From the NCBI GenBank assembly GCA_013239625.1, contig MU055574.1, forward strand, positions 20,568,115 to 20,632,114: DNA of 64,000 nucleotides, written 5' to 3'. A model generated the notes under the pieces. The model saw only the letters and a program-made list of their open reading frames with translations. It did not search any database and was not told the DNA's origin. The stretch comes from Lama guanicoe. Lineage: Eukaryota. The translations under genes and the position numbers were made by a program. Below are positions 10,301 to 59,800 of this stretch, piece by piece. Positions within the stretch are counted from its first letter, which is position 1. Every line of letters starts with the position of its first letter.

Positions 10301-13300
10301 GGGCAGAGTAGGGGCAGAGAAGGCACGCTAACCCTCCCCTTCATCAGCGCTCAGACTTCACTTAAATAAAGCCCAAGCGAGGTGGTGGAACTGTTACTTC
10401 TGATCCTGTTACGTGGTGGGCGCTGACTTGGGCACTGACTTGGGCGCTGGGCTGTAGCACTCAGCACATGGGCGTTCTGCTCTCCTGGGGAAGGTGCATA
10501 GTAGGTAAGCCCCGTAATGTACAAGATATCAGATGAAGATAAAAGTCATCGTGTAAAGAGAAACACAGCTGTAGTAATCATGGCCACTGCTGCCGGCAGT
10601 CTGTACAGTCTGGCTATTACTCTAGGCACGTTTAGTTTCTTTTCTTTGCTCCTCCCCAAGCCTGTGAGGTAGCGCACAAGCCATTGGGTCCATCGGTAAT
10701 TTGACCAAAGTCATAGAGACAGTAAGTGGTGGAGCTAAAATTTGAACCCAGAGCTGTGTGTGGGTTCTTTCCATGAATCTACTCATCTTCCCACTAGTCC
10801 AGTCCATGGAGTGCCTAGTCTAGCTTGAAAGTGGGCAATACTGGGGTTCCTGTAACTCTAGGAGAAGGGGGTACATCATCCCTTCACTTACCTCTTATGC
10901 ACCAGGCACAGGGCGAGCATCTTCCATTGCTTGGTGACTTCCCGGCTGCCCTGCAGGGTGGGAGTGCTGATCTCATCCTGAGTGGTCATTGACTTGTGCA
11001 GGGTCTCAAACTGGGATGTGATCCTACTCTGTTTTGTTTCCAGACTTCTACTACCTTATGTTACTTATGGAGACTTGAAAAAAATTGATCATGTTTTAAA
11101 GGAACCTTGGACCTAAGGGTAAGCTTGGTTACTACGCCGGATGCGTGGTCTGATTCAATGTCACATGTCACCTTTTGCAGACGCCCTACGGGACTCCAGT
11201 CCGCAGTTGCGTGCCTGTCCCCCCGGCACTGCCGCCTGCCTGGTGCAAGGGGGCCAGGGCTTCGACGTCGGCCGGCCCAAGGAGGGACTGCAGCTCCTGA
11301 GCAACGACAGGTCGGTGTGCTGCTGGCGTGCCATCTCTGGCAGGAACTGGCTTTTCAGGGAGTTGGGAGAATGTCCCTTTACAACAGGGCTTGAGAGAGT
11401 ACGTGCAAAATTACTGCTTCCCATATGCTCATAAAGTTCTTTGTTAGTCATGACTTGAGTCACATGTGCTGGCTTGTTGACCTTCTAATCACTTGTCTCT
11501 TAGAGCTGGAAAATGTGTGTCACGAGCCAGCTCGTGCCTACACGTGCATCCACTTCGTGAAATAACACCTCCCTTAAGGCGTGTTCTGACGGTTTCCCTG
11601 CTTCGCCATCCGTGACATTGGTTTTATGTCCAAGGTTATCTGTTATTTAAAAACATGGTCCTGGGCGGGCGAGCGGCAGGAGGGCCACTTTGCAGGCACC
11701 CTTCTGGATGCAGAGTTTGCCTCCCTAACTGAGATACGCCGGCCCCCAGTTCCCAGTGACCGTGGTTCCTTTCTCCTAAAAAGCGGTGCCGGTTGCACGT
11801 GCGCCTCTCCTGTTCGTGTGTCTGACTCGGCAGAGATGTCCTTCTCCAGTGTGTCACACGTGACCACGTCCTGAACTTGGGTCAGGGATTTTGATTTTCT
11901 CCCCGTTCCTGGGGCATTTGGCAAGTAGCTGCTGTAGTCCGGAGCTGGTGGCACTTCCCTGTGTGCAGTTATAGGTCGCACTTCTGTCCCCAGGAAACGC
12001 TGGAGCATAAGCGCAATTTAAAGGTGTTTGGGAGATGTCTGCACGTGGGTCTGTGTTCACTGCCGTGGCCGCCGAGCCAAGTACTGCAGACGGGTGGTTC
12101 AACACCGGAAACTTGTTTCCTCGGTGTTGGAGGCTAAGGTGTCAGCAGGGTGGGTTCTCCTGAGACCTTCGCCCTCGGCCTGCAGGCAGCCACCTTCTCC
12201 CCGGTCTTCTCACGGCCTCACCTCTGTGTCTGGGTCCTGCTCTCCTCTAGTAAGGACACCAGTCGTTCTGTTGAGGGCGCACTCCGATGACCGCATTTTA
12301 GCTTAATCACCTCTTCAGTGGCCCTGTTTCCAAGTACAACCATGCGTGGAGCTCCTGGGGGTGGTTAGGGCTTCAACATGCGAATTTTGTGGGCACACAG
12401 TTCGGTCTCTTGCATTGTCCTGTGTGATGAAAGGGTGATTCTTCATCCTGGGAGGGCTCGAGAGGAAGTGTGGACATCGAGCAAAGGCCTGAGCTTGTCT
12501 TCAGAGAAGAGGAAGGTCATCTGCTCTCTGTGGTTCTGTGGCCAGCACACCAGGAGCCGAGCCCATGCCCCACAGGGAGAGCAGGACCCCCCCCCCCCCC
12601 CCNNNNNNNNNNNNNNNNNNNNNNNNNNNNNNNNNNNNNNNNNNCCCCCCCCCCCCCCCGCGGCTCCAGGCTTTTCCCAGCTCCCCGCAGCCGAGGCCCT
12701 GCCACTGGGCTCGCTTCAGTTTCATTCCAAAAGAGGAGACCTTTGGCTTGCACTTAGGAGTTGTGTTCAGAGAGGAAGTGGTCGAGCAGCTTTGCGGCCG
12801 ACGTGCGCTCGGCCTGCTCGCTCGTTTGTTTTGTTTTGTTAGATCCTTCACGGTTGTGTGTGTTTGTTGTACTCAGACAGCTTTTCTTCGTATTCGGGTT
12901 TACTTATTTTTTTAAGAAAATAGCACTCACCGCGTTGACTTAAGAAAAAAATTTTCTGAATGACAATAAAGGCAAATTGCTCTGTCCCGTGGCTTCTTTT
13001 ACATTTCAATCTTTCTTCTGTTAACCCTCCTTCCCCAGAGAGTGTGCTGAGTGCTCAGGGCAACAGCTCACCCTGAACGTGATTTGCACTTTTATAACAG
13101 CCTTTCCTCCACGTGCCTCCCGCAGGCTTGTCCTGAGCTACGCGAAGGAAGAGGCAATCCAGCCAGACTTCTGTGACGGTCACCGCCCGGCGGTGACGAT
13201 TACGTTCGTCTGCCCGTCGGAGCGCAGAGAGGTGAGGGCCTGGTCTTGGGCGGCCTCCCCGCAGTGGAGGGGCGTCAGGGCTGGGGCTGCAGCCGGGCGG

Positions 13301-16300: not shown

Positions 16301-19300
16301 GCAGGACATCAGCTTAGCCCGCACTCCTTCCTGCTTGACTCGGGCATGTTGCCGTCTGCCCGTGAGCAGGTGGATGCTTTCCTGGGCTTCACCATCAGGG
16401 AGTTCTGTTCATACCATTTGCTTTATGTTGTTTGTAAGGATCCACACTGTAGGAAGATTATGTTGTCGCTTTATTTGGCTTTTGTAATCCTGAGATTTAT
16501 GTTTCTGAGGAGTTTTGATTTTTTGTTATTATTGTTTTTCCTTTGGCGGTTTGAGAATCTGAAACACCATTGGCATTCCCCAAAGTTTTTTTTTTTTTCC
16601 TTTTTTGGGGGAGGGAGGGTAATTAGGTTTATTTTTTTACTTACCTGTTTATTTTTAAGGGAGGTCCTGGGGATTGAACCCAGGACCTCGTGCATGCTAA
16701 GGGTAAGCACACACTCTGCCACTGAGCTACACCCTCCTCCTGCAACAAAAGTTTTAAACAACAGGGAAAACGTTCATCACATTCTTGCCACCCTTACCTT
16801 GGTTGTTACATTCACAGAAGCGTTGCAAAAGCGTAGTTCTCTGAAAAAATAAGCGTTGTTCAGGATCCCTCGGGTGAGACATCTTAGGGCAGTTGCTTGC
16901 AAAGCTGTGTCTTCTTGGGCATCACTTATTTTGTACAAAATCCAAAAATGAGAGCAGAGGGGTCTTTGTGCTCAGAGTACAACCTTCAGTGCTTTCTTCC
17001 AGCCAGTTCTTACTTTGAAATAAGGGGATGACAAGCCCCGCACATTTGGAACTCATTTCCTTGAGACAATTCTTTCCCAGCAGGCGGGAGAGCTTGCTAT
17101 TTTCTGTCAGTGCTGATTTGTGGACGGTGTGCAAAAGACTTAATATAGACATGTTTAAAAATTCAAGTTTCTTGGTTCTACCAAATGTTTGTGTGCGTGT
17201 TAAAAAATCCAGGTACTCCGACGGAGACCTCACCTTGATCTACTTTGGAGGTGACGAGTGCAGCTCAGGCTTCCAGCGCATGAGCGTCATCAACTTCGAG
17301 TGCAGTCAGACTGCAGGTGAGCGGGCCCTGGGCTTCACCACGTCTGCATGGATGAGCGCTGGGTGGAGAGGCCAAGTGTCCTCCTTCAGACTCGGCCACC
17401 TCCAGTTCCCAGCCTAGGTTCCTCTGTTGGAGCGGGCAGGAGAACCCCAGCTCCGCCCCACCCACGACACACACATCCTGTTTCCATTTTCCCCCGTGCT
17501 CTGTTTGTTTTGGGCATGGGCCCAGCACTGGCTTGCTGGGCAAGCGTTCTGTCCTGAGCCCTGGCTCTCCCTGGAGCGCGTGCAGAGCCGGCAGGCCGTA
17601 TTGAGTCACCAGCTCCAAGTGGGTTGTTGCTGAACAGCTCTTCTTTTAGGAGATGAGTTTCTAGGTGAGTCTTTTTGTAAATGGTGACTCCCCGTTAGAG
17701 CCTAGGCTTTGGGATCATGAGAGGTAACAGGGCAAGCTTAAACAAATGTTTGGTTTTCCTGAGCAGTGGGAGAAGTGGCCTTGAAGTTACGATGGCACTG
17801 GCATTGCAAAAAGCCAGGCTGCTGCCTGTGTCTCCAACGTTCTAGACTTGGGTCGCATCTGCAGGGATGCATGGGACCCCACTGTCATAAGAAAGGTGTC
17901 CCACCTGAGCACCTCCAAGTGGGGACCTCAGCTGCTCTGCAAGCTGGCCAAGCCTCCGCATGGGCTCGGTCCTGGAGCCGCCTGGGTCCAGCCCCGTCTG
18001 CACAGGCCTGCACGGCAGCCCCGCCCCTGAGGGTCTCCTGGCCCCTCATGCTGTTTGTTTGGTGTGTTTCTGTGGTAGAGCTTTTGACCATCTGGTCACA
18101 GGGCAGCCTCCTTCATGATTCACTGAGGGGCCTGGGAGGGGCCTCTGTGCTTCAGGAGTGTATCTGTGACAGTGACAGTGGTCAGGAGAGGTGGTGACGA
18201 GCGCCAGGCGCTGATAAGCAGCCTGGAGAGTAAGTGGAGCGTGGCCTGGGGGCGCAGATGGAGGACCTTATGTCAGGATGTCCCGGTGACTCCTGTCATT
18301 TCTGTCTGTAGCCACCCTTGTTCGCAGCTCTACTGTTGACCTGCCAGCCCTCCTTGCTCCCCGGCGTGCACTCCGGTCTGACGTTGGCTTCTGTTCGCTA
18401 AACTTCTTGTGTTCTCAGTCGATGCGTTCAACACGCGTTGTATTAGCACCTATCTGCGTAGACCCTCTGGGGCCTAAGGAGGCTGAGATGCTGGAGAGCC
18501 TCCGCGCGTTCACAGACCGGAAGCAGAGGGAGATCCGGAGAGCGATGGCCGCGGTGCAGGCTGACGCGGGCTGGACGGAGCGCCCGGGCAGCAAGCGCTG
18601 TCCCCGGGTCTTCGTCAGGAGGGGGACCCTGAGGTTGGTGGGTATCTGTGAGGGGCAGGCAGTTAGGAGAGAGGAGGTGCTGCTTGGGTGAGCCCTGCAG
18701 GACAAGTCGGGGGAAGCCAGGAGCAGAAGAGGGGGAGCTGTGGGCACTGGGCTTCCGGCAGAGGGAACAGCTCATGCAGAGGCGTGAACTGGGGAAGCTG
18801 TGAGCAGGTCAGAGCTGTGGGTCCAGAACGTGGCTAACGATGACCCTAGAAAGGGGAGTGGAGCCACGTGGTGAAAAGCTTGTAGGTTCTGCAGAGGAGC
18901 TGGGCTTGATGTAGAGATCCGTGCAAAGGAACTTTAACCAGGGGGTGGCCGGCGTCTGGTCTGGGTGTGGCCTTTGGTGCGTCTCCCTCTGGTTTGGGTG
19001 CCTCTGCCCTCCCCAGATTCTCCTTCCTTCCATCACCCTCACCTCTTCTAGGCTTGTAGGAGACCCTTTCTGAAGTCCACCTCTTCTGCTCTGTGTCCAA
19101 GTCCCTGGGAAGTCCAGCCTCCTCCTCATTCCAACTCCCCAGACCCTCCGACCCTCGGGCTTCCCCTGCGGGCTGGGCTGCCCTGATGCGGCCAGTCTCC
19201 TCCCGCCCTGTCGTTAACCCTTTTGGCCCCGGTCTGTCTGCGATTTTTATAAATGACTTGGCCGAGATCTTTGGGAATGTGCTGGTCTCATTTGGGCATG

Positions 19301-31300: not shown

Positions 31301-34300
31301 CCACGCTCTTGTCCAGCTCTCCTACCCGGGTGGCCAGAGGATGGAGTCACGAGGGGGACAGGCAATGCAGCATCAGAAGCTCCTGGCTCCTGGCCAGGGG
31401 GACAGGGTTTGAGTCCCATCTCTGATGCCTGTTGTAAGGTGGCCTTGATAAGTCACTTAGCATATCTGAACCTTGTTTGCCCTTTCGTAAGACAGAATAG
31501 AGTCTACAATGATTTTGAGGATTTACGACCATTATCTTTGTGAGATAAGTGTACACGAGATACCTAGAGGTGTCCCTCAGTGTACTGGGGAGGGGAGAGG
31601 TGCAGGAGGGATTGGTTCCAGGACTCCAGCAGATACCAAAATCCAGGGATGCTCAAGTCCTTTACATGCAGTGTTACAGTGTTAATGTTACTTAAACACA
31701 TCCTTACTTCATTTCAGTTACTTGTAATACCTAATACAATGTAAATGCTATGTTGCAGTTGTAGATACAGTGTAAATGCTATGTTAATAGATGGCTGGAG
31801 GCAAATTCAAGTTTTGCTTTTTGGAACTTTGTGGAATTTTTTTCCTGGATATTTTTGATGCAAATTTGATAGAATCCATGGCTGTAGAACCCGCGGATAC
31901 AGAAGGCTGACAGTTTTTCCCCCTACGTGTAGGAAGGGTGGCTCCGTGTTTGCCAATTGAGTATTTGTGTCGCGTTTGTAGAACACAGCTCCCTACCGTG
32001 AATAACAAGACTCCACTATGTTAGTCATGATGAAATGAGTTGTTTTTCTTCAGAGGGAGATCTAACAGACATACATGTTTGCAGGGTTCATTTTCTGAAA
32101 TCGTCTCCATCAGCAACTTGGGGGTCGCCAAGACGGGCCCAGTGGTGGAGGCGAGTGGCAGCCTCCTGCTGGAGTACGTGAATGGCTCAGCCTGCACCAC
32201 CAGCGACGGGAAGCGGACCACCTACACCACCAGGATCCACCTCATCTGCTCCAGGGGCAGCCTGGTAAGGAAGGCCCTGCTGGGCGCCGATGGCCTTGGC
32301 TGCTTTGGGTTCAGAGGGGTGACGGTTGCTCTTCACTCCGCTTCAGGTCAGCATGTGATGTAAAGGCGGGGAGGCAAGGAGCACACAGTGGTGCTCTTGT
32401 GGCTGTACTTTCTCAAGTTGAAGCCTCATCTCTTACTGCTGGTTTGTGGCACATACTGCATGGTGTTCTGTAGATCTGAGTTTTCTCTGAGTGGTGTGGA
32501 CACCGTCCTGCCCTTAGTTCTTGTGAGTTGGTGATCCCAGGATCACCGCAGCAGAACAAGTCTTAGAGACGGTTTGGTCCAAACCCCAAAGTTCATAGAT
32601 GAGGAGACTGAGGCTGGGCACAGCTCAGGGCCAGGGATGAACGATGAGGGATGGATGTGTAATATGTCAGCAAAGCAGGAATAAAAAAATTAAGGTTGAG
32701 AAATGGAGACGGTGATAGAGATTGTATTTGGGCCTGAGTTCCTTAGTCAGGACAGAAGAGAAAACTGGAAATAAGAATGCTTTGGGGTCATTATGTACAG
32801 TCTCAATTGATTTTAAAAAACGTGGCAGAAAATACATAACATAAAATTTACCATTTTAGCCATTTTTACGTGTAAAGTTTAGTGGCATTAAGTACATTTA
32901 TGATAGGGGAGGGAAGTAACTCGGTAGAGTGCATGTGTTTAGCATGCGCTAGGTCCTGGGTTCAATCCCCAGCACCTCCACTAAAAAAATACATAATAAA
33001 ATACAAGTACATTTACAGCGTTGTGCACCTATCACCAGTAAGGATTTCCAGAACTTTGCTTTTTTCACCTGGAGTTTATACCTGGATCTTTTATACTTGG
33101 ATCATGTGTTTTTCGAATAATTGCCAAACCCTTAGATGAACACAGAGTGAGGAAAATAAAACTTGTTTATTATCAAACAGATTATTTCCTTAAGTCTGTG
33201 TTTCAGCCTCCTCTCGCCTGATGGGCGTGAGCTGGCTCCCCGTGTGGTCACTCCTCTCTGAGCAGGCCGGGGGCCTTGGTTCCTTACCTTCTAGTCGTCT
33301 TGCAGACGCCAAGTTTTCTCTGTCCTTTGCCAGCACACAATGTTTTCCCAAGAGATAATGTCTCTTGAGCCCCAGAAGGCCGCTCTGGCAGGGGAGCGAA
33401 GTACTTACTGGCCGAGCAGGGCCTGTGTGTGCGAGGAGGGCGGCTGCACTGAGATGTGAACGCGCAGTCTGCTAAGCCCAAGCTCGGTTTCCTGGTTTCC
33501 ACTCCTGGTCCCGGGAAGGACTCCTGGCTGCGCAGCCTGGCCCTCCTCTATGCCGCCCCCTCGGTGCACCTCTGTGTCCCCTCCTTGGGCCTGGCCCACC
33601 CCCCTTCCCTCCTCTGGTGTCTCGTTGCCATGGAGATCTTGGACACTTCAGGAGGATCTCTCAGACCCTTCTATTTTCAGCTTTCCTGTGACATCCTGTT
33701 TGGACAGAGTTTTTAAGTTTTCAGAGCTATTTTCCTTGTTACTGTATCTCTCCGCCTCGGCTCAGGGCCTGGCATGTTTCCAGGGCCCTGGAAATACCGA
33801 GTGAGTGAAGGTGATGTCCCAGAGGTTCTGCAAATCACGGAACTTTTCACAACCACGTCATGAGGCAGAAGGGATGGGTGTGCTCTTAGTTCACTGTTGG
33901 TGACGCTGCGGCTGAGAGGGTGGCTAGGGGGACTTCCAGATCAAAGGGTGCTTGGTGGGTGACAGACCACTGTCATGTCCTTCCCTGTGCATCTTGGCAG
34001 GCGCCTTCTCAGGCCTCAGTGTTCTCATCTGTACAGATGGCAGGTGAGGGTTGTTGTGAGGCTAGCTGAGATATGTTGTCGCATCCTTTGCGCAGTGTCT
34101 GGTGGCCATGGCCTCTGTCTGAGCGGCCATTGCCCATGGTGGAGGCGATGCCCTCTCAGAAGCTGCTGTGGCACATGTTGGGGGACTTTTTATTGAAAAC
34201 ACTCAGGAAAGTGCATGGGTTGTAAGTTACAGCTGGTGGACTTCTGCAGCTTGAATGCACCTGTGTAACCAGACCCACGTCTGCAAACAGGACACCAGCA

Positions 34301-37300: not shown

Positions 37301-40300
37301 CCCCCGCCCTCCAGCTGACTGTTGGCATCGCACCCGTCTCACCCGGCCTGCCAGGCCCAGCGGCCCCATCCTGCTCCTGGGGGCCCCCGTGCAGCTGAAG
37401 CTGCCGAGTGAGACGCTGCTAAGGTGCCTGAGCACCCACGAATGGAGAGGCCAGTGGGTGGGGGCAGCCAGGGTGGCTGGTGCCCACCACCTGGCAGAGC
37501 CATCCTGGACTTCTCTCGGCTCTGTTGTGAACTTATGGGCAGGACCAGAAAGGGGAGAGGGGGCCCTGAATCTGCACCATCAGATTCCTGTAACCACGCA
37601 GCCCACATGGCTGCAGGGCACCTGTCTGGGGTGTAGTCTTGACCGGCCATTTCTTAAGCAGGAAGCTTTGGTCTAGGAACATCACTTTCTGTACGTAGAT
37701 CCTAATTTAGTGGATGTTGTTCGCGGACAGTTAACCAGTTACAGAGAAGTCTTTCCTTTCTGTGTGTTCAAAGCAAAGAACATATTCTCCTTCAGTGGAA
37801 TGGTATCAACATCTTTAAGAAATACAGGGGTATCACGTTTTATTTACTTTTAATTAACATGACTTCAACTATATATACTTTTTCTAATGTGATCAAAAAT
37901 ACTGTGAAATTCTGACTACTCGTGTTCCTTCCGTTATAGATGCTGCATTATCACGTGTAACATGTATCATGCATTTAGGGATGCGGGCTGTGCGCATAAA
38001 GCCTTAGGGGCAATTCTGGGCATTGCCATTTGGACATTCATTTTGGCCTTACGTGCTAGATTTAGGAAGCAACTGCCCAAACGTGGAAAGTTGGTAATTT
38101 TGATAATAAGTAACAACTGTTTAGCTTGGCAGGCTTTGAGTTGCTGGGGCTCGTGTTGCTGGTGAGTCACGTGCCCTGAGTTAGCGTGTGGTTCTCACTG
38201 TCCGACCTGCAGTTTAACGTGTGCGGCACGACGCCCCTCTGTGGGACCCTGGACGGAAAGCCGGCTTCCGGCTGTGAGGCAGAGGAGGAGGAGCTCAAGA
38301 ATCTGAAGCCAGGAAGGCTGGTTGGACTGGAGAAGAGCCTTCAGCTGTCCACCGAGGGCTTCATAACTCTGACCTATAAGGGGTCGCCTTCCCATTCTGG
38401 AGGTGAGCCCAGATCTGTGTTGTTTTTGCAGCTGACAAATGTCTGGTGGTTCTGAGTACGTGACCTGAGCGCCCGGAGACTCTGGGCCGCACGTGCACGG
38501 CCCCCTGTTGTGTTCCGCCAGGCCCCTGGGGGCCATCTTGCCGTGAGAGGGATCCTGGACCACGGGTGCCGGGGCTCTCTCCTTGTGTCTGCCCGCCTGG
38601 TGGAGAAGTGCTGGTTCCTGCACTTGTCGCTGTTGATGAAGACGAGGCTCAGGGACCCGTTGGCGGCAGACTGAGGGCTGACCTGCATGATGCCCAGGTG
38701 CCAGCTGTTGTCCTCTGACACCAGGCAGGACCGCACAGCGTTGCCTGGAAGAGCCGGCAAGGCCGTTGCAGGGTTACTGATGAGCTCGTGTGGCTGACAG
38801 CCGCCAGTGTTTATTCTGCGGGGTTTGAATCCAGGCTCCAGCAAGCCAGGGGCACAGCACGTGCATAACCGCTCATAACTGTGTTACCCCGGCCCAGCCT
38901 ATTCCTTAACCTCTCTGCTTCAGTTTCCTTATGTATTAAATGGGTACCTCTGGACCTGTTAATGTGTCAATGGCCACGAGGTTCTCCCCTGAATGCAGCC
39001 CCAGCCACTGTGGTCCCCTCGCTGTGGGAGCCTCCTCCCCACCCCCACTGCAGTAGCCTGTGTTCCGCTTGGCAGTCAGAGTGACATTTTGAATGTTAGG
39101 TCACGTCACTTCCAGCTCAGGCCCCCCAGGGCCCCACCTGCACCCAGAGTAGAAGCCAGCCCCGACCCAGTGGCTGTGGGACACCTGCTGCTTCTCTCTG
39201 ACGGGGTCACCTTTCACTCTCCTGGCTCAGTCCCGGTGGCCACGTGCTCCCGGAACTGTGAAGGCCTACTCGCCCACGTCCCCTCCTGAGCCTTGGTCCT
39301 TGCTGTTCCCTCTTCTCTCAGGATGGCCGGGTGGTTCATTTCCTCACTTCCGCAGGTATGGGCTCAGATGTCACCTCAGTGAGCCCGGCCGCCCCATTCA
39401 AAACCGCCACGCCTCATCCCCGCCACCCTTGTGATTCCTTAGGCCCCGTCCCTGCCACACTCCACTCCCTTTCCGCCTGGCACCTTAGGCCGAATGAGGA
39501 TGTCGGCTCCCAGGAGGTGGGGGCTTTCTTCTGTGTGTTTCACTCCTGTGCATAGTAGGACCTGAGAGTGATGTTTTTCTAACATTTGGGAGGATAAATG
39601 GATGTAACATTTGCATCCTTTCTGGAATGTAAGAATGCCAAGTTCATGGTGTAAACCCACCTGTATGTCAGTCACTGTCACAATGAATGTGGCCTCCCTG
39701 GACCTCGGATCAGGTCCCTGGAACAGACCCAGTGCTGCGGCACGAATTCCCGGGGGTGGCCTGGAGGCTGGTTCTCGGGGGCGCCGTCCTGGTGCCACAC
39801 ACGCGTGTGGGCAGCGGCACTGTGATTGCTGCTGCTCACAGCCTGGCTTCCTGTTCCAGGGAGAGCTGATGCTTTCATCATCCGCTTTGTTTGCAATGGT
39901 GACGTTTACCCAGGGAACCCCAGGTTCCTGCATCAAGACATCGACTCTGGCCTGGGGATCCGGGACACTTTCTTTGAGTTTGAAACGGCCTTGGCCTGTG
40001 TACCTTCTCCGGTGGATTGCCAAGTCACAGGTGAGGCTGGAGGACCAGGAATTAAGAGGCTGATCAAAAATGTGTGTGTGTGTGTGTGTGTGGTGTGTTA
40101 TTTTACAGGCAGCACGACATGTGTGCGTCGTGTTTTCTGTGGACAATGCCTAGAGTTAAAAAATTTCTCTTGAGGAGAGTGGATTTGTAATTCATGGTTT
40201 TAAGCAATATTTTGGAATCAGAAGCTGCTTAAGAACAGAAGAAAACTAAGGGGAAAGTCAGATACACTGTCAGAGCTCATCACCTGAGTGAGAGAAACAG

Positions 40301-43300
40301 AACCAGGATGAGGCCCCGTTAGACAGTCCCTGACACCCAGTGGGGCTTCCAGGACGCTTGTTCCTGGGGGACCGGCCCCACCTCCATGTCCACAGTGCTC
40401 TGTCGTGAGTCGCGGTGCTGAGGGCCAGGCAGAAGATGTTTCTGTTGGAAGCCCTCTCGGCTTGCTGTGGGTCCCCGCGTTTTTCTGAAATGATGCTCTG
40501 CTTGTGCATCCTTGGTCTTCGGGGTTGGAAGTGATGCCCAGCGCTCATGGGAAGGCAGGGGTCTCCAGCATTTGCCTTGTGTTTCAGACCCGGCTGGGAA
40601 CGAATATGATCTGAGCGGCTTAAGCAAAGCCAGGAAGCCTTGGACTGCAGTTGACACCTCGGCTGATGGGAAGAGGAGAACCTTCTACTTGAGTGTCTGC
40701 AACTCCCTCCCTTACATTCCCGGCTGCCATGGTGGGTGTCGCGCCTTGGACCCCAGTTGGTCCTGCCCCCCCACCCCCACCCCCACGTCCAACGGCCTTG
40801 CTGGCTCTTCCAGGCAGCGTTGTGGGGTCCTGCCTGGTGTCGGAGGACGGCAGCTTGAACCTGGGCGTCGTGCAGGTCAGCCCTCAAGCTGCCGCCAATG
40901 GGTCCCTGAGCCTCGTCTATGTCAACGGTGACAAGTGCGGGAACCAGCGCTTCTCCACCAGGATTATGCTCGAGTGCGCCCACACGACGGTGCGTGCCTG
41001 TCCCTGCCACCTCGGCTCTCTTGTCTGAGTTAGAGCTTGCCCGTGTTCTGGAGGGGGTCGGGCCATCAGCGGGGCCCGACCAGCATGTGCTGTGTCCCCG
41101 CAGCTCTGACATGTTTCCCAAGTGCCGTGTGCTGTTCTCGTGGTTGCAAGTCGGGTCAGCAAGTCAGCTCTGGCTGGCGTTTGACTGACTCTCTTTGCCA
41201 AATGAGAGCACAGTGAACTGTTGGTTTCCACCGCAGGGATCGCCGACCTTTCAGCTTCTGGATGACTGCGAGTACGTGTTTGTCTGGAGAACGGTGGAGG
41301 CCTGTCCTGTGGTCCGCGCCGAAGGTAAGGCGCCGCCCTGCGCCGCTCAGCGACGTGTAGATGTGTGAAGGGGGCGCAGCAGCCCCGCGTGTCAGCGGGC
41401 GGGTCGTTCTCACCCTTGAGTTTTGTTTGCTCCACTCCGTTGCTAACTTTACCTGTAGCGTTTTCCTCACGTTCCTGACTGGTGGGTGGTTGGTGAGAAC
41501 ATGAACGTGGGGCTTTGTTTTGCTTACGTGGATCTTCAGCCTGTGACCTGAAGCTTTTCTAGAAAGCTGTCTGCCAGGCAGTTTGTCTCATGCGCACAAA
41601 CCAGATGAAAACAGGTGGAAATGATATTTAATGCCTATTTTAAGACAGTTCTTAGCTGATGAAAAGTTGCAAAACGTTTGCCTGAAAGTATGAGTGCCTG
41701 TGTCGATGCCCTTCCCTCGCCGTGTTCTTGAAGGAGACAACTGTGAAGTGAAGGATCCGAGGCATGGCAACTTGTATGACCTGAAGCCTCTCGCCCTCAA
41801 CGACACGGTCGTGAGCGCCGGCGAGTACACGTACTACTTCCGCGTCTGCGGAAGGCTGTCCTCGGGCGTCTGCTCAGCCGGTGACAGGTCCAGGGTCGTC
41901 TCGTCATGTCAGGAAAAGCGGGGACCCGAGGGATTTCAGAAAGTGGCAGGTACTGTGGTTTTTCCTCCTTGTTTTTGCACAAGAATGGAATTACATATTT
42001 AAGACATCAGGCTACAGGTGACGTCTGTCTCGGGTGGGAAGGGTGGCTCCTGCGCTCGGGGGACAGCGTATTAGTGACGTCTCTGCTTTCGCTTGATTTT
42101 CGGAGCCGGGCCTCGGCTGATGAGCGTTGTTAGAGTTTATTTCATTCGTGCTTAGCCACGCCAGTTACTGATTCTAAGTTCATGTCTCTTTTTCCTGTTT
42201 TACCTTTGGGACCCACTGGACTGTTAATGAGGTCGTACTTTCTAGAATTGAGTCCAAGGGGACACATTTTGTGTAGGCTTGGGCTGTAAAACTTATGGGG
42301 CAGGCTGTGGTCATTGTGCTGTCTCAGCAGCCGGGCAAGTGATGCTAAGTTTAAGAACTTTAAAAAAAGGAAGTTGAAGTAGTTGATGGGGGGTGCATGG
42401 GAAGACCTTGGGGGCTGTGCAGACGAGGTGACATCCTCTTAGCTCAGCAGGCTGAGGCGTGTCTGCATGTCGGTGATCCCGTGGGTAGTCTGGAAGGTCA
42501 CAGCCTTGGCCAAGAGAAGGCCTGGTTTTATTCTTTCATGGTGTCATGTGATGGGGCCAGTGGTCCAGTGCTGGTAGGCCAGACACACTTGGTCCTGTGA
42601 GAGTTCGTTCAGGGTGTGTGGCGTAACGTGTCTGGGGACTAGCCTGGTGGCCTGGGGACTTCGTGAACCAGTCGTTGTCTGACTGGCTGCTTCTTGAACA
42701 GGTCTGCTTACTCAGAAGCTGACCTATGAGAATGGGGTGTTGAAGATGAACTACACTGGAGGGGACCCTTGCCACAAGGTGTACCAGCGCTCAACGACCA
42801 TCTTTTTCTATTGTGACCGCAGCACCCAGGCGGTGAGTGTGCTCAGTGCACATGGGGTGGGAGGGTCGGTCCGCCAGCTCAGGGGCCACTGTCTTATAAA
42901 AAAATCTGCTCTTAAGTCTTGAAGTCTCCTGGTTAGCTTAGTTTAAATATGTTCTGTACACAAAATGGGTTCAAGCCTTGATCAACGCATGTTGAGTAAA
43001 GATCAGGACCATCCCTTACTATTTGCATCCTTAAAACTGAAGTTTCCCAGTGGGGAGGGTATAGCTCAGTGGTAGAATGCATGCTTAGCACGCACGAGGT
43101 CCTGGGTTCAATCCCTAGTACCTCCAGTAAAAATATATTTAAAAAACTTTTTTTATTAAGAAAAAGGTCTTAACCCCCCCCCCCAACTGAAGTTTCCACT
43201 TCATGGGTATGTCTCTCAACTTTTGCAGCCGGTGTTCCTCCAGGAGACTTCGGACTGCTCCTACTTGTTCGAGTGGCGCACGCAGTATGCCTGCCCGCCT

Positions 43301-46300: not shown

Positions 46301-49300
46301 TTCCAGATGGGGCACTGAGGACCCCGTTAGACAGAGCTGAACCTGACGGCCGTGCTTTCTTCCCTTCAGAGATGGGGCTGGGAACACCTACGATCTCTCA
46401 CCCCTGTCAAGATACAGTGACAACTGGGAGGCCATCACGAGGACGGGGGCCACCGAGCACTACCTCATCAACGTTTGCAAGTCTCTGGCTCCCCAGGCTG
46501 GCTCGGGTGAGGGGTCTCTGGGTGGGCTGGTGGCTTGTAAGGGGCTTTATGGGGAAGGAACGAGTAAGAGCGAGGCTCCTTGAAGGTGTGTTGCTTTCTG
46601 ACATGTGAGTGGTTTGGCCAAGAAGTAACAGGAAGAGTTATCTGAGGGTTAGTGACTGACCCTGGTGTGGCCCAGGACAAATCAGTGCTGAAGGTTCTGC
46701 TGGAAACGCTATAACCTTTTTTGAACTTGAGGAGACAGAGGTAGAAATAATCATCATTGCAGGTAATTCTCAGCAGGGCAGGAGATTGGAGGGTGTGAAA
46801 GGAGATCTGGGTGCCTGCCCCCCACATCTACTGAGAGGAATGTGGGTGAGGGCCTCTTACGATGCACCCAGACCCCTGGTGCCAGTGATGAGACTAGAAC
46901 TCAGCGGTCCACGTGGGGCCAGGGGCGATGCATAGAGACCATGGTGCCCCGTGTTGGGATCCTGAAGACGAGACGTGTCCCATTTTCATGGAGTTTCATG
47001 CAGCTTGCTCACGTCTTGTCTGGCTTCAACTCAAGGGGTGGGGGAGGTGATTCGGTTTATTTATTTATTTTCAGTGGGGGTGCTGGGGATTGAACCCAGT
47101 TCCTCGTGCACACTAAGCATGCACCCCACCACTGAGCTGTACCCACCCCTGTTATGTAACTATGATAAGTGTTTCCATCCTCTGCATGGTCTGAGGCCGT
47201 GGCCCACTTCCCGTTGCCTTGTGTGCTGGCCAGACTGGTGACACTGAGGTTCTTAACCTGTGAAGGGGCTCATTTGTCCGGGGCAGATGGCACAGGCATT
47301 TTGGGGACTGGGAAGATGGCTCAGCTCTTGGTGGCTTCTTAGATAAACACAGTCCATGAACGTAGGCCATTTAAAACGTCCTGTTGGCTTGATCGAGGTA
47401 TTTAGCGTCATCCTGCTTGGGGGTCGGGAGTAATTTAGGCTGTCGTGCCTTAGACTCTCCCCACACCCCAGCCCCCCGTCCACCTGTGGTAAAACAGCGT
47501 TTAATTGAGGGAGAACTCACGGGGTATCTTTGGCACGTGACGTATGTAAAAGAAATCACTGACACTTCGGAGTGGTTGTTAGAGTCAGTATGTCGCAGCT
47601 GGACACACGTGCCTTGTGAGCCCAAGGCTGGAGAACCGCTGATGTCGCTGTTCCTCGCACCCCTTGTGCCGCAGAGCCGTGCCCTCCAGAGGCGGCCGTG
47701 TGTCTGCTGAGTGGCTCCGAGCCCGTGAACCTCGGCAGGGTGAGAGATGGTCCCCAGTGGAGAGATGGCGTGACTCTGCTGGAGTATGTCGACGGTGACC
47801 TGTGTCCCGATCGGATTCGGAAGAAGTCTGCCACCATCCACTTCAGCTGCAGCGAGAGCCAAGTGGTAGGTGACACGGCGGCCTCGGCCCTGACGTGCAG
47901 CTCTGGGGACGGTACGTGTCCCAGCTCGGCGGGACTGGTGTCTTCCTTTCCCGGGAGGAGAGTCGAGGGGCTCGGGGTGCCCGGCCTGACAGCGGGTGAG
48001 AGCAGCCCGGCCTCGGCCCTGTGCTTCTGGAGTGCCTTCCTTCTCTGGCCCCCGGGCTGCCCTGAGGTTTTAGTTCTAGAATTAGTTGATTCTCTTTAAA
48101 GGTTGGCTTAGATTCCCCAAAGGCTGGAGTGGAAACTGGTATCTGGCAGCTTGCCCTCTGTCTTCCTCGAGGCCACTTGGGCAAAGCAGAAGGGCGGGCA
48201 GAACCAGTCCCAAGGTGGCTCGCCCACCCCTGACTGGGTGACCCCGTAACTTAACCACTGAACTGGTCGCCGATTCACGACCTGAGATCTACCTGTTTCA
48301 CCAAGTCGCCGTGAGGCTGAGAGGAGGTGCGAAGCGCCGGGCGTCACGCCTAGTGTGTGGTCAGTGCGCGGCAGCTGGGTTCCCGCCTCCGCGGTGATTC
48401 CTTTCCCTGATGGGTCCGTCTGTGCAGTTAAGCAGGTGTGGGCTGAATTAATGGTCTCTCTGGACTGCTGTTCACCACGGGAGCGTCTCTGCATGGGAGA
48501 TGAAGGCGAAGCCCGGGTGCTGTTCTGTGAGATTTGGGTTGTAGCTGATGTGAGTGAGGTCGGGCTGGGCCAGCGCACTCCACGTCAGGTCGAACTGCTA
48601 CCTGTCCGGCGGCGTTCGGCCGGCAGTGGGAGGGGCCCGGGACGCAGGCCACTCGGGAACCTGCGACCTGCCTGCCCTCCTGGCAGGGGTGGTGGCTGAG
48701 GGTTCCTCCCGGAAGATAGTGCAGAGGTGTGAGCCAGGCCCCTGGGCCACTGAGGTCTGGAAACCTCGGCTCGGGGCTCCTCACGAGGGTGCCAGGGCTG
48801 CAGGGCTGCGCAGGCCTGTGGTGGCCCAGGAGCCAAGCCGGCGTGGGGTTCACCGGGGAGGGCAGGTGCTGCTGGATGACTGTCACCCACTCTGTGTGGA
48901 CGGAACGTGTTGGAGACGTCGGGAGCCAGCCCTCACTGGTGCGGTGCGGAGACTAGTTAACCCACGCTGGTTCTTCCAGAGGGTCTTGTTTTGTCCATCG
49001 TAGCAGATTTCATTTCCTGGACAGAATCACTTCTTTCCTCACTCCTGACTCCCAGCAGCTCTTTGAGCTCCTTTGTCCACCCTGTCCTTGCCCCGTCTTC
49101 TGTCTTAGCTGTGGGAAAACCTTCCTGCCCCCCCGGGGATTTCAGCCTATGTCTCACCCTGTGTGTGTCAAGCCCCCTGTGGTATCTCAGGAGCAAATCC
49201 TGACCCTTTTATTTTCCTCAATCTGCCCTCGTCTCGCAAAGACGTTGAGATGTTCACGCCCTGTGGTGCTTGGCAGGGAAGCTCCTGCCTGAGTCAAGTC

Positions 49301-52300: not shown

Positions 52301-53761
52301 GCCACAGAAGGTGGTGGGGGGTAAATGAGTGTGTGTGTCCTGAGGATGCACTGGGTCATTGGCCAGGGAAACAGCAGTCCCCATGCAGTGTTGGGCAGCG
52401 GGGAGACGGGACAGCATCAGGGCAGCTACGTGGGCTCCTGGAGGAGACGTCTCCTCCAGGAGACGGTGCAGCATTCCTGATGTGACCCGAGAGAGGGATC
52501 CCTGTTCCCTAGAATCTTCCAAAATCGGCCATGAGTAGAAACAGAACTGTTGTTACTAACATAGGCTCAAAACTGATAACCACGGGCAAACTGAAGTTTC
52601 TTTGTTGCACTGCACTGTCAGGATTTGTCAAAGGTGCTGCTCTTAACCCAGTTTCTTTAGATACTACCATTCTGCAAAACCAGTAACATAATTTTTACAA
52701 TTTTTTATTAGTCTTTATTCCCTTAACCTGGGGAACAACTAATTTCCTGAAATGTTTCCTTTCTTTCTTTGTTTAGGATATTGGCCGAGTCACAGGACCT
52801 CCAATACTCAACCCCATAGCTAATGAGGTTTACTTGAACTTTGAAAGCAGTACTCCTTGCTTGGTGGACAGGCATTTCAACTACACCTCTCTGATCACGT
52901 TTCACTGTAAGAGAGGCGTGAGCATGGTAAGTGAGCGCCTGTTCACTGTGGGAGCCGGGAACCCGAAACGCCTGATTCAGATCTAAGGATGCCCGTATTC
53001 AAAATACCAGTCTTGCATCATACGGTGTGTCAGTGGTGCATCGAGTAATTTAAAACCATTAACTTAACAATAAGTCAGTCCACGCTGGGTTACCAGGGCA
53101 GATTTTACACACAGAGGCTTGCTATAATTTAAAAATGTGAATGTTTATAAACAGTTGAGCACAGACGTGGCATTCACCTCTGCCTGCCAATACACAGAAG
53201 TGTCGGCTGTCTTTTCCCTTTTTTTGAATCACGACGTTACTGATGTTACTCTTAAACTGGGAAGTCAGACAGCTGTTTTGGCAGCTATGATCACTCAGGA
53301 CATAACCCAGAATTTAGAAATTAGCAGATGAAAGAAGACCTCTGGAATCAAAATAGCTACAACTAATCTGTACTTTCTACTTTTAAGGAGGCCATTGACA
53401 TCTTTACATGCATTTACCAAACAGCATTGGCTCCCATTAAAAAGGGTACTGTGTTGTTATAAATAGCTTTGTGTGAGTTCTCTTTTGACTTCCCATTAGA
53501 ATAGGAGATGAATTGGTAGAGTTTGCATTGACTCAGAAGGGCTGCCTAACGGCACACAGCCCTGCCTGCTGCTCAGGTGCAGAGCTCTGCCCCGGGCTGC
53601 CCTGCCCACAGCCCCTCCCTCTCCTGTGCTTCTGAAATCCTTAAAGCTCTGGACACCCAGTCTTTGATGTGGATGGACTGAGGCTACTTGGGCTCTGTGT
53701 CTCACTTAGTATGAATTTTCATACGTTTTGCTATAGAAATATTACCGTATTTGATTACAGG

Positions 53762-56800: not shown

Positions 56801-59800
56801 TTGGGGGGGTAATTAGATTTATTTTTTAATGGAGGTACTGAGGAATGAACTCAGGACCTCGTGCATGGTAAGCACGTGCTTTACCCCTGAGCTATACCCT
56901 CCCTGCAAGAAAGGCTGTTTTTAAGCTCTCTGTGGGTTGTGCTGCGTTGCCTTGAACATAGACCTCGGCAGGACCAGGGGCCAAAGCAGGTGCGGGGTGG
57001 TCAGCGCGGCTCACTCCCCAGCTCGCAGGACTTTGGTCCACACCCGTTCTCAGCACTGGTGATTCACACTCACGCTGAGTGGAGCTACTGCTGTCACGGG
57101 TCTGTGGGGTGTCCAAGGAGTAATCAGGAGTGTGGTGACCGGCTGCACTGCTGGGGGCCTGGGCTGGGGGCTCACAGTGGCCCGGACGTAGCGCCCTTGC
57201 CGCTGCTGCGTGCGTGACACAGACCGATGTGAGTTTCCAGGAGGGTGGTGGGATGAATGCAGGAGAACGCGCTTAGTTCTTGTAAGTAACCGGGGAACGC
57301 AGTTAGCAGTAAGGACTGAGAAATGCTAACTTACAAGGGGCTGCTACAGTTCTGTCCTGAGGCTTTTCGTGGCAGGACCTTTCTCCTGGGCAGGTGGGTG
57401 ATGCTCCCAGGTTTAGGTAATTATAGGTATCTTATCATTACTGTTTGTTTTTTGCTGACATTCCTGTATTAATCACATACTGAACACCCGTCTACAAGGA
57501 GTTGTGCTGGTGTTGCAGAATTAAGAACTGGGGGAACCAGGTCTATTTAGGCTTAAGATACACGTGAAAGGAACAAAACGAGAGGTGGCCAGCGCAGCGT
57601 GGGGAGCGGCTGGGAATGGACAGAGCCCCTAGGTGCTAGCAGCAGAGAGGAGACAGGCTGAGGTCTGACACTTCTTCTGTGTCCCCAGCAAACAGCCACC
57701 GGACGTCGGCCATCATCTTCAAGTGTGACGAGGATGCTGATGTGGGGAGGCCACAAGTTTTCAGTGAAGTTCGAGGGTGTGAGGTGACGTTCGAGTGGAG
57801 AACAAAAGTTGTCTGCCCCCCGAAGAAGATGGAGTGCAAGTTCGTGCAGAAGCACAAAACCTATGACCTGCGGCTCCTGTCCTCCCTCACCGGGTCCTGG
57901 TTCTTCGTCCACGACGGGGCCTCGTGAGTCCCCGCCCCCGCCCCCCTCACCCCGCTCTCGGGCGGCAGGAGCCTACCGTTCCTGACAGGGCAGCTGCTTC
58001 CGCTCAGGCTCTGAAGGTGGGGCGGCAACGAGTCTCAGGCCCGGCGTCCAGCAGGCGGTTTGGAAGCAGAGGAAGCGGCTGATCGGCCGTCGGCCTGATG
58101 AATTAGTGTCGATTGGGTCTGCATCTGTGAGGGTGGCCGTCCAGGGCTGGGCGTGGGGAGGCGTGTTGACTTTCTCAGCGCTGCTGCACAAAGTCCTTTG
58201 GCCGCGCTGGCCCGAGGTTGGTCAGTTACGCTGATGGCTCTGTGTGCGTAGGGCCCTCGGCCGGGGGCTCTGAGGTCCTACATCCTCCCCGCAGAGGGCA
58301 GCGTGGCCCTGGAGGACCTCGGTAACCTCGAGTCAGGTAACGACTCGCCAGGGTTTGAGCTGCTGCCTGTCCTGACTCGAAAGCCCTCCTTCTAAAGCCA
58401 CCACACTCAGGGTCCCCCCCGTGTGCCTGGGGGGCACACATGCTCCCTTCTTCCGCAGTCAGCCCCTCTTGGGCCTTTGTTTCTCAGGAGATCTGTTCTG
58501 GTGCTGCGTCCAAAGGTGTGATGGAGTCTGTGGCTGTTGGAACGATGACTTCTCCCGGAGGGGTGGGAAGAGCTGCCCCGTGTGTGTCGGCATGGGCACT
58601 GACCATTGCTCCGTCTGTGTCCTTCCACAGCTACTACATCAACTTGTGTCAGAAGATCTATAAGGGGCCCCTCGACTGCGCCGACAGAGCCAGTGTTTGC
58701 AGAAAGAGCCCCTCGGGCGAGGTCCAGGTCTTGGGCCTTGTTCACACACAGAAGCTGGATGTCATAGGTAAGGCCTGGATCCTTGTCACGTGGTCACAGG
58801 TGCTGCTTCTGAGTTGGGAAGCTGAGGGTGTCCTCATGTGACCGGGAGGGTCAGCTCTGGCTTGGTTGAAACTTTTGGCGGCACTCTCAGTGACTCTTTC
58901 TCTGGCATTTGGCACCTCCCAGAACATTAAAGTAAGTTCTGCCCGAGATGCTTTGAGGCAGCAGATCACAGCCTGTGTGTCCAGAGGGCTCGGGGATCTC
59001 GGGAAGGTACCTGTGCCCAGGAGGAGGGTGGAATGTGCAGGGTCCCTCGGAATCTGCTCCAGCTGTGGGTTGTGTCTGAGTCTCCGTAGACACATGCGAG
59101 CATTTATTCTGGAAAGTCAAACGGTGACAGAACCTGGTAAAGACAATTCAGGAGGATGTTTTTGTAGGGTCTTAATTTGTAGATAAATAATGAAGCTTTT
59201 TTGAATAGTTTTAATAGAAAATTTATCTTGCAGTTGGTTGTTGAGTGAACAGTTCACTATGTAAAGGAAGGGTGGGGCTCTCCTGGTTTTGGAACAGTCG
59301 GGGTGTGTCAGAGGGCAGGAAAGGAGAAACGCTCACTTTGCTTGTTAGGCTAGCGTAGGGGTCCCTGAGTTGTCCTGATTAAACCACAGGGAGATTACAT
59401 CTGCTCAAGCTGTGGAAATGGAGGAAGGGGATTCTGAGGGAGCCACTGTCACCCTTAAGAAAAACCCTGCAAATTGGAACTGAAGGCGAGTTGCCCTGAG
59501 GGGGTGGGTGGCCAGACCTCCAGCCTGGCTCGCCCTCTGTCGGAGATGGTCCCACCTGCTCCTGGAGGGCGCATCATGGCCCGAGGGTGGCTCTGTCCCA
59601 GCCGTCTCATACTTATGTTTGGATATTTGACCTGACTCTCCCTCGGTTTCCCACAGCCAACTCGTAAAGCAACATTGAAGCCTCACCAGATTAGCTAGTA
59701 AAACCCCCTGTTTCCCGACACAGCGGGTGGGGTGTTACTCTGAGGTCCTTCCAGGGCAGCCGTCTAAGGACAGTCACCATGGCCGCCGCGTTCAGTTAGG

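What the first reader, a model, noticed from the sequence alone, without database searches (positions are those of the whole stretch)
38596..40962. Intron 22 carries an inverted 173-bp copy of exon 25 and its splice acceptor: a candidate built-in antisense element
Seen: 38596-38768 is the reverse complement of 40790-40962 with no gaps (152/173 identical). It covers the last 24 nt of intron 24 (pyrimidine tract and AG) and 149 of the 176 nt of exon 25. It includes intron sequence and shows no poly-A or TSD, so it is not a processed retrocopy. The arms are 2021 nt apart and enclose exons 23 and 24 (315 nt, a multiple of 3). Inference: the pre-mRNA can fold into a long duplex made from unique coding sequence rather than SINEs. 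That could mask the exon-25 acceptor (skipping 176 nt shifts the frame, likely NMD), favour exon 23-24 skipping or back-splicing, or act as an ADAR editing-complementary sequence. This would be a post-transcriptional dosage control in a dosage-sensitive growth gene. I do not recall it being described.
Basis: partly seen in the sequence, partly recalled or inferred. Interest (0 to 1): 0.85.

Follow-up and report, generated by a model that had tools for sequence, protein, structure and literature searches.

The report
Inverted exon-25 copy in IGF2R intron
A camelid IGF2R gene carries, in intron 22, a real and old backwards copy of 173 bases from the start of exon 25; it is most likely the scar of a DNA copying accident, it could pair with the exon in the RNA, and nothing yet shows that it regulates the gene.

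Summary
Bases 38596-38768 are the ungapped reverse complement of 40790-40962 (152/173). That source is the last 24 nt of intron 24 plus the first 149 nt of IGF2R exon 25. It is the longest and best inverted repeat in the 64-kb window. Fourteen DNA runs under five organism labels hold 97-99% of the sampled words, so it is not an assembly artefact. It has no TSD, no poly-A and no extension beyond 173 nt, and it includes intron sequence. It is therefore a local templated inverted insertion, not a retrocopy. The copy evolves as non-coding DNA; non-CpG divergence of 0.073 suggests tens of millions of years.

The sense pre-mRNA could form a 167/173-paired duplex (-367 kcal/mol). That duplex would cover the exon-25 acceptor and loop out exons 23-24.

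The dosage-control reading is therefore untested.

One oddity remains. Arm differences are 15 G·U-type, 1 A·C-type and 5 transversions (null P about 0.001-0.002). Transversions sit at the neutral expectation, so selection for pairing fits poorly too.

The scan's unchecked notes list similar inverted local copies in NOTCH1, SNAPC4 and CGNL1 of this genome, which suggests a recurrent mutational process.

The parts
38596..38768 (-). Inverted copy (read on the minus strand) of the intron-24/exon-25 junction, inside intron 22, starting 194 nt downstream of the exon-22 donor
   Evidence: 152/173 identical to the reverse complement of 40790-40962, ungapped, E 3e-54. Its translation keeps 35/49 residues and still scores as CIMR (1.4e-8). 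Differences fall at codon positions 9:6:5, the pattern of non-coding decay.
40790..40962 (+). Source arm: last 24 nt of intron 24 (pyrimidine tract and AG) plus the first 149 nt of exon 25
   Evidence: Exon identity comes from 6um1 residues 1147-1203.
40790..40813 (+). 3' end of intron 24 (pyrimidine tract, AG at 40812-40813) that the duplex would cover
   Evidence: Sequence; 23/24 identical in the copy.
40814..40989 (+). IGF2R exon 25, 176 nt, CI-MPR domain 8
   Evidence: The 176-nt length means skipping it shifts the frame.
38213..38402 (+). IGF2R exon 22 (donor GT at 38403)
38403..39859 (+). Intron 22 (1457 nt), host of the copy
   Evidence: BLAST of the intron against the window finds only the exon-25 arm.
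39860..40030 (+). IGF2R exon 23 (171 nt), inside the loop
40588..40731 (+). IGF2R exon 24 (144 nt), inside the loop. Its donor lies 58 nt upstream of the source arm.
40732..40813 (+). Intron 24, only 82 nt

Best explanation
This is an old, fixed, local templated inverted insertion. During replication or break repair (template switching, MMBIR or a templated insertion), 173 bp spanning the intron-24/exon-25 junction were copied in reverse orientation into intron 22, 2 kb upstream.

Shown: the copy exists, is fixed in the sampled animals, includes intron sequence, and lacks a TSD and poly-A. It has since drifted as non-coding DNA.

Inferred: in the fraction of transcripts where intron 22 is still present when exon 25 emerges (about 1 kb later), the two arms can zip into a 173-bp duplex. 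That duplex would hide the exon-25 pyrimidine tract and AG, loop out exons 23-24, and be a good ADAR substrate. I expect these RNA effects to be a low-level, tolerated by-product and not a maintained dosage control.
For: The repeat is real and exact in register. It contains 24 nt of intron with no TSD, poly-A or flank extension. It is present at 0.97-0.99 word share in 14 DNA runs under 5 organism labels.

The 21 differences are 16 transitions and 5 transversions; 11 fall at the 30 CpG-involved sites. They are spread over codon positions 9:6:5, which is neutral decay of the copy. Non-CpG K is 0.073.

At some positions the copy keeps residues seen in human or bovine that the exon has changed (A at residue 2, N-S-W at 12-14). 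At most other positions the copy is the derived arm (one search compared). This is two diverging lineages with no recent conversion.

Transversions (5) match the neutral simulation (4.7) exactly. Template switching is documented to create reverse-complement copies and RNA hairpins in one step (PMC5453318, PMC8794818, PMC10710096; MMBIR in PMC2621351). Scan notes list similar inverted local copies in NOTCH1, SNAPC4, CGNL1 and others in this genome (unchecked leads). The literature searches found nothing on such an element in IGF2R.
Against: The transition differences are skewed 15:1 towards changes that keep G·U pairing in the sense RNA. A strand-symmetric null with CpG hypermutability and coding constraint gives P = 0.001-0.002. 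SINE controls in the same gene show no strand bias (28:27; C>T 10, G>A 11, A>G 12, T>C 12). Pure neutral decay does not predict this.

No empty site was available, so junction microhomology, the signature of template switching, could not be checked. No RNA data were available to show that the effect is small.
Confidence: 0.6

Rival explanations
1. This is a maintained long-range pre-mRNA structure. The copy arose as above, but selection has kept it as a built-in antisense element. Its pairing with the exon-25 acceptor tunes productive IGF2R mRNA through exon-25 skipping or intron-24 retention followed by NMD, or through ADAR editing of exon 25.
For: The G·U:A·C skew is 15:1. On the copy arm alone, polarised by human and bovine residues, there are 7-8 sense-strand C>T changes against 0 G>A. 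The sense duplex (-367 kcal/mol, 167/173 paired) is clearly better than the antisense one (-313). The duplex survives in the global MFE of 38300-41100 (167/173 pairs). Stable complementary pairs that loop out exons lower their inclusion, flank circRNAs and attract ADAR in human (PMC8052449).
Against: Transversions, which also break pairs, are not depleted (5 observed, 4.7 expected). Given 6 disruptive changes, 1 A·C and 5 transversions has P about 0.04 under equal selection. One mismatch is negligible against -367 kcal/mol, so selection per site should be ineffective. In human, strong structures over active splice sites are depleted, not favoured (PMC8052449). Similar copies in unrelated genes of the same genome point to mutation and not to design. 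There is no RNA evidence.
Confidence: 0.2
2. This is a circRNA driver. Pairing brings the exon-24 donor (58 nt upstream of the source arm) close to the exon-23 acceptor and promotes a 315-nt exon 23-24 circle.
For: The geometry fits: the arms bracket exons 23-24. Complementary pairs lie preferentially outside back-spliced exons (PMC8052449). Igf2r is a prolific circRNA locus in mouse (PMC6138396).
Against: The downstream arm is mostly exon 25, not intron. The known mouse circIgf2r forms use exons 2-12, not 23-24. No back-splice reads could be examined.
Confidence: 0.1
3. This is an assembly artefact (a chimeric or fold-back read built into the assembly).
For: Inverted local duplications are a known long-read artefact type (own knowledge).
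Against: The arms are 12% diverged with a CpG-decay spectrum. Word share of 0.97-0.99 in 14 DNA runs from at least 9 studies is incompatible with absence of the roughly 7% of words that cover the copy.
Confidence: 0.02
4. This is a processed retrocopy fragment, or a fragment carried in by a transposon.
For: The exon-sense G>A excess in the copy could recall APOBEC editing of a first-strand cDNA.
Against: The copy contains 24 nt of intron 24. It has no poly-A and no TSD. The G>A changes sit after C in 6 of 8 cases (CpG decay), and none is in the GA context (TC on the cDNA strand) and only 3 of 8 in the GG context (CC) that APOBEC3 enzymes prefer. The flanks match no repeat in the window.
Confidence: 0.02

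Closest known systems
Template-switch / MMBIR templated inverted insertions (PMC5453318, PMC8794818, PMC10710096, PMC2621351)
   Same: One event writes a reverse-complement copy of nearby sequence. There is no TSD or poly-A, and the copy can create an RNA stem at once.
   Different: Described short template switches are mostly tens of bases with adjacent arms. Here the copy is 173 bp placed 2 kb away, and junction microhomology could not be examined.
Pairs of conserved complementary regions and exon loop-outs in human pre-mRNAs (PMC8052449; ATE1, PMC7797038)
   Same: Long-range intramolecular complementarity that brackets exons and overlaps a splice site. Predicted effects are lower inclusion, circRNA formation and ADAR editing.
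   Different: Those are short (about 10-30 bp), intronic, and defined by cross-species conservation or compensatory change. This one is 173 bp, half exonic, apparently lineage-specific, and its conservation is untested.
ADAR editing-complementary sequence paired with an exon (e.g. GRIA2 Q/R site; own knowledge)
   Same: An intronic segment complementary to coding sequence of the same pre-mRNA.
   Different: A classical ECS lies in the adjacent downstream intron, is short and imperfect, directs site-specific editing, and is deeply conserved. Here the partner is two introns upstream, the duplex is long and near-perfect (which would give promiscuous editing), and editing has not been shown.
Reverse-complementary matches flanking circRNA exons; mouse circIgf2r (PMC6138396)
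   Same: Inverted complementary arms bracket internal exons of a gene known to make circles.
   Different: The arms are unique sequence, not SINEs. One arm is exonic. Known circIgf2r forms involve exons 2-12.
Inverted duplication of target-gene sequence giving MIRNA or hairpin-RNA loci (10.1101/682591; own knowledge for Drosophila hpRNA and mouse oocyte endo-siRNA)
   Same: An inverted copy of coding sequence gives dsRNA with extended identity to the target.
   Different: There the two arms form a separate hairpin locus that yields small RNAs. Here one arm is the functional exon itself, and no small RNAs are known.
Inverted PEST-exon copy in the NOTCH1 last intron of the same genome (scan note s1-858085; unchecked here)
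   Same: A backwards copy of about 150 nt of coding sequence sits in a neighbouring intron of the same gene. The follow-up read it as an old copying scar.
   Different: It is a different gene and window. I did not examine its sequence or its substitution skew.

Membership tests
Local templated inverted insertion (template switch / MMBIR) | Reverse-complement copy of a nearby (kb-scale) segment of the same locus | tested here: met
   173 nt, 88% identical, source 2021 nt downstream.
Local templated inverted insertion (template switch / MMBIR) | No target-site duplication and no poly-A; the copy can include non-exonic sequence | tested here: met
   (no TSD of 5 nt or more, no A-run); the copy includes 24 nt of intron 24.
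Local templated inverted insertion (template switch / MMBIR) | Microhomology at the switch points relative to the empty site | not testable with these tools
   No orthologous empty site could be fetched (closed; empty).
Processed retrocopy | Intron-less, with a poly-A tail and flanking TSD | tested here: not met
   Contains the intron 24 3' end; no poly-A or TSD.
Long-range pre-mRNA structure (PCCR / exon loop-out) | Two complementary regions in one pre-mRNA with a stable predicted duplex | tested here: met
   -367 kcal/mol; 167/173 pairs kept in the MFE of 38300-41100.
Long-range pre-mRNA structure (PCCR / exon loop-out) | Evolutionary conservation or compensatory substitutions | tested here: inconclusive
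   G·U skew of 15:1 (P about 0.001-0.002), but transversions are at the neutral level and no orthologues were available.
ADAR ECS-exon duplex | Intronic sequence base-paired with the edited exon | tested here: met
   In silico only.
ADAR ECS-exon duplex | A-to-I (A>G) changes in RNA at the paired exon | not testable with these tools
circRNA-promoting reverse-complementary match | Complementary arms in the introns flanking the circularised exons | tested here: inconclusive
   The upstream arm is intronic. The downstream arm is 24 nt intron plus 149 nt exon 25.
circRNA-promoting reverse-complementary match | Observed back-splice junction (exon 24 donor to exon 23 acceptor) | not testable with these tools
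The literature reports only exon 2-12 circles in mouse.
Hairpin-RNA / endo-siRNA source | Small RNAs of about 21-22 nt mapping to both arms | not tested
   No small-RNA data were reachable.

The most novel reading that the evidence does not exclude
The 173-bp intron-exon duplex is under selection in the sense pre-mRNA, as the 15:1 G·U-preserving skew would suggest. It would act as a built-in antisense clamp on the exon-25 acceptor, and as an ADAR substrate, that sets the fraction of productive IGF2R transcripts. With the similar copies noted in NOTCH1, SNAPC4 and CGNL1, it would be one of a camelid-lineage class of exon-derived cis-antisense elements born by template switching.
Probability: 0.12. 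Interest if true: 0.75.

Novelty: new member of a known kind. Interest (0 to 1): 0.35.

Why it matters
If it is only a scar, it is a clean and datable example of a kb-range templated inverted insertion that placed unique coding sequence in antisense inside the same transcription unit of an essential, imprinted, dosage-sensitive gene, and was tolerated for tens of millions of years. That bounds how much long exon-intron dsRNA a pre-mRNA can carry.

If the G·U skew reflects RNA-level constraint, it would be a rare mammalian case of a long, non-repeat, exon-derived regulatory duplex whose birth event is still visible.

Either way, the skew and the sister cases in the same genome give a concrete genome-wide test. 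Count G·U-type against A·C-type differences over all local inverted copies in transcribed regions, sense against antisense.

Tried and rejected
1. Read laying on 37900-42100 with one DNA and three RNA runs. There is no depth, junction, back-splice or A>G evidence.

2. The look-up of encoding contigs for the exon-23 ORFs of other mammals.

3. The search for homologous proteins with the 156-codon minus-strand frame through the copy. No hit, so no orthologous copy could be found that way.

4. Metagenome scan with a 30-nt pattern across the right junction of the copy. No match.

5. Exons were searched singly by reference.

6. TSD, poly-A and extension of the match: none found.

7. General transcription-associated strand bias as the cause of the skew. 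Rejected as sufficient: composition skew implies only about a 1.2-1.5-fold bias, and SINE controls are symmetric.

8. APOBEC editing of a cDNA or ssDNA intermediate. Rejected: the G>A changes follow C (CpG context) in 6 of 8 cases and show no enrichment of the GA or GG contexts that APOBEC3 enzymes prefer.

9. ADAR-related selection against A·C mismatches. It does not explain the missing class, which is intronic A opposite exonic C.

10. Rfam scan: only tRNA-SINE hits and nothing at the arms.

11. Literature searches: no description of this element or of camelid IGF2R splicing.
Full report
**Observation.** The inverted repeat is exactly as described. The repeat finder reports arms 38596-38768 and 40790-40962: 173 nt, 88% complementary, 2021 nt apart. 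A script confirms 152/173 identities without gaps, and blastn gives E = 3e-54. Local alignment with 300-nt flanks on each side does not extend the match by a single base. A self-BLAST of the whole 64-kb window shows it is the longest and most identical inverted repeat present. The only other dispersed repeats are six ~90-nt tRNA-derived SINE fragments and a tandem array at 1-1161.

**Gene and exon map.**
- The exon at 40814-40989 translates to a peptide matching bovine cation-independent mannose-6-phosphate receptor residues 1147-1203 (6um1, E 1e-44) and the human domain-8 constructs. It also matches Pfam CIMR.
- Exon boundaries read from the sequence are phase-consistent: exon 22 38213-38402, exon 23 39860-40030 (171 nt), exon 24 40588-40731 (144 nt), intron 24 82 nt, exon 25 40814-40989 (176 nt), exon 26 41237-41324.
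- The source arm is therefore 24 nt of intron 24 (pyrimidine tract and AG) plus 149 nt of exon 25.
- Exons 23+24 total 315 nt, so skipping both stays in frame. Skipping exon 25 shifts the frame.
- tblastn of a full-length vertebrate IGF2R (P0011) gives a collinear exon series. It makes these exons 22-25 if the first coding exon in the window is exon 3. That fits the GC-rich island at the window start, which other notes read as the intron-2 DMR.
- Exons were searched one by one by reference. I did not build or search a joined spliced model.

**Is it real DNA?** The arms differ at 12% of sites with a CpG-decay spectrum, which an assembly duplication would not show. In addition, 14 DNA runs under five coded organism labels and at least nine studies hold 0.97-0.99 of the sampled 31-mers of 38300-41100. 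Words overlapping the copy make up about 7% of that stretch. No 31-mer is shared with the exon arm, because the longest identical run is 19. Absence of the copy would therefore cap the share near 0.93. This is an inference from shares, not a laid alignment.

**What it is.**
- The copy carries intron sequence and has no poly-A, no TSD and no flank homology. It is not a processed retrocopy or a transposon passenger.
- It is a local templated inverted insertion. Replication template switching, MMBIR, or templated break repair is known to produce this kind of copy (PMC5453318, PMC8794818, PMC10710096, PMC2621351).
A protein search with the 156-codon minus-strand frame through the copy found nothing. 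A metagenome scan with a junction pattern found nothing.

**Evolution of the copy.**
- Of the 21 differences, 16 are transitions and 5 are transversions.
- Eleven fall at the 30 CpG-involved sites. Non-CpG divergence is 10/143, K = 0.073.
- In the coding part the differences fall at codon positions 9:6:5, and 14 of 49 residues differ. The copy is therefore not under coding constraint, although it still has no stop codon and still scores as CIMR.
- Comparing residues with the human and bovine chains, the copy is the derived arm at most sites (S>N, G>R, N>H, V>I, V>M, A>S, Y>F, V>I, G>S, G>R, R>H).
- The copy keeps states that the exon has since lost: A at residue 2, and N-S-W at residues 12-14 as in human. 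So both arms have diverged and there has been no recent gene conversion.
- With a generic mammalian neutral rate of 1-2.2e-9 per site per year (my own knowledge, rough), K of about 0.07 mostly on one branch gives roughly 25-55 million years.
- I therefore predict, and did not test, that the copy is shared by Old World and New World camelids.

**What it could do.**
- In the sense RNA the arms pair at 167 of 173 positions: 152 Watson-Crick pairs plus 15 G·U pairs. The longest uninterrupted run is 43 bp and the duplex energy is -367 kcal/mol.
- For comparison, each arm folded on its own gives about -70 kcal/mol, and the antisense-strand duplex gives -313 kcal/mol.
- Folding 38300-41100 as one molecule keeps 167 of the 173 pairs in the MFE structure.
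- The upstream arm starts 194 nt after the exon-22 donor. The downstream arm emerges about 1 kb after the intron-22 acceptor. It is kinetically plausible (inference) that some transcripts still hold intron 22 when exon 25 is made.
- Such a duplex would hide the exon-25 pyrimidine tract and AG, loop out exons 23-24, and bring the exon-24 donor near the exon-23 acceptor. It is also long enough for promiscuous ADAR editing.
- In human, stable complementary pairs that loop out exons go with lower inclusion. They lie outside back-spliced exons and are strongly enriched in A-to-I sites, and strong structures are depleted at active splice sites (PMC8052449).
- Known mouse circIgf2r forms involve exons 2-12, not 23-24 (PMC6138396).

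**No RNA evidence.** I have no depth, junction, back-splice or A>G data. Searches, made earlier, had included them, and later work on them was limited to local scripts. The only RNA hint is that six RNA runs hold 0.28-0.34 of the words of 38300-41100. About 0.17 would be expected from the exons alone, so some intron sequence is present in their contigs. Which part cannot be told.

**The G·U skew.** A companion first-reader note (s1-857465) states that the arm differences are skewed towards G·U pairs, and I tested this.
- Of the 16 transitions, 15 leave a G·U pair in the sense RNA and 1 leaves A·C.
- Controls in the same gene are symmetric. SINE inverted pairs give 28 G·U-type against 27 A·C-type. 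SINE copies against their consensus give, on the sense strand, C>T 10, G>A 11, A>G 12, T>C 12 and 24 transversions.
- The compositional skew of the gene (T/A 1.29, G/C 1.14, TG/CA 1.48) implies at most about a 1.2-1.5-fold rate asymmetry.
- A simulation with strand-symmetric mutation, 5-15-fold CpG hypermutability and coding constraint on the exon arm expects 9.3: 7.0: 4.7 (G·U-type: A·C-type: transversions). It gives P(at least 15 G·U-type and at most 1 A·C-type) = 0.001-0.002.
- Part of the skew is ordinary. On the exon arm, the C of codon-boundary CpGs can change silently while the G cannot.
- The copy arm alone still shows 7-8 sense-strand C>T changes (6 at CpG) against 0 G>A.

Selection for pairing is nevertheless a poor fit, for two reasons.
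- Transversions, which also break pairs, sit exactly at the neutral expectation (5 observed, 4.7 expected). Given six disruptive changes, a split of 1 A·C and 5 transversions has P of about 0.04.
- One mismatch is trivial against -367 kcal/mol.

An APOBEC signature is not seen: the G>A changes follow C (CpG context) and show no enrichment of the GA or GG contexts. I leave the skew as an unexplained anomaly that modestly raises the odds of RNA-level relevance.

**Context in this genome.** The scan's own notes are unchecked, so I treat them as leads only. They list several analogous local inverted copies in other genes of the same camelid genome: the NOTCH1 PEST exon in the last intron (already followed up and read as an old copying scar absent from a ruminant), SNAPC4, CGNL1 and another 275-bp case. 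Recurrence across unrelated genes favours a lineage-wide mutational process over a purpose-built IGF2R regulator.

**Verdict.** The structural inference (not a retrocopy; a long unique-sequence duplex is possible) is supported. The regulatory interpretation is untested and, on balance, less likely than a tolerated scar. I put about 0.6 on that reading, about 0.2 on a maintained regulatory duplex, about 0.1 on a circRNA role, and a few percent on artefact or retrocopy. The searchable literature holds no description of this element. In kind, it is a new member of known classes: templated inverted insertion, and long-range intron-exon complementarity. Interest is moderate, at 0.35.

Noticed in passing
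window 40072-40095: A (TG)n microsatellite lies about 40 nt downstream of the exon-23 donor. ORFs over exon 23 from other mammals (P0001-P0004, P0009) also run into 'CVCVCV' translations, so the repeat seems conserved in position across mammals.
   Followed up: no
window 40732-40813: Intron 24 is only 82 nt, so the duplicated 24 nt make up almost a third of it and may reach the branch-point region.
   Followed up: partly
window 38374-38844 (minus strand): A 156-codon open frame runs through the inverted copy. It has no homologues in the protein collection, and the Pfam CIMR match covers only the copied part. It is probably a chance open frame in GC-rich DNA.
   Followed up: yes
window 52407-52489: An 83-nt imperfect palindrome, 76% self-complementary, seen in the self-BLAST.
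   Followed up: no
window 6566-6651, 16650-16737, 32906-33001, 43053-43146, 47066-47149, 56813-56903: Six tRNA-derived SINE fragments of about 90 nt, three of which pass the Rfam tRNA threshold. Apart from these, the tandem array at 1-1161 and the IR itself, self-BLAST finds no other dispersed repeat.
   Followed up: partly
window 2000-64000: There is strong sense-strand composition skew: T/A 1.29, G/C 1.14 and TG/CA 1.48. This suggests marked transcription-associated asymmetry over the whole gene.
   Followed up: partly
window 1-1161 and 1-2000: A tandem-repeat array in a 74% GC island at the window start. Other first-reader notes call it the DMR2/AIRN-like island of intron 2.
   Followed up: no
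window 12603-12644: A run of 42 N (gap or masked); left as it is.
   Followed up: no
same genome, other windows (scan notes): Unchecked notes list further local inverted copies: the NOTCH1 PEST exon, SNAPC4 exon flanks, a 182-bp repeat around CGNL1 exon 8, and a 275-bp intron copy. Together they suggest a recurrent templated-insertion process in this lineage.
   Followed up: no
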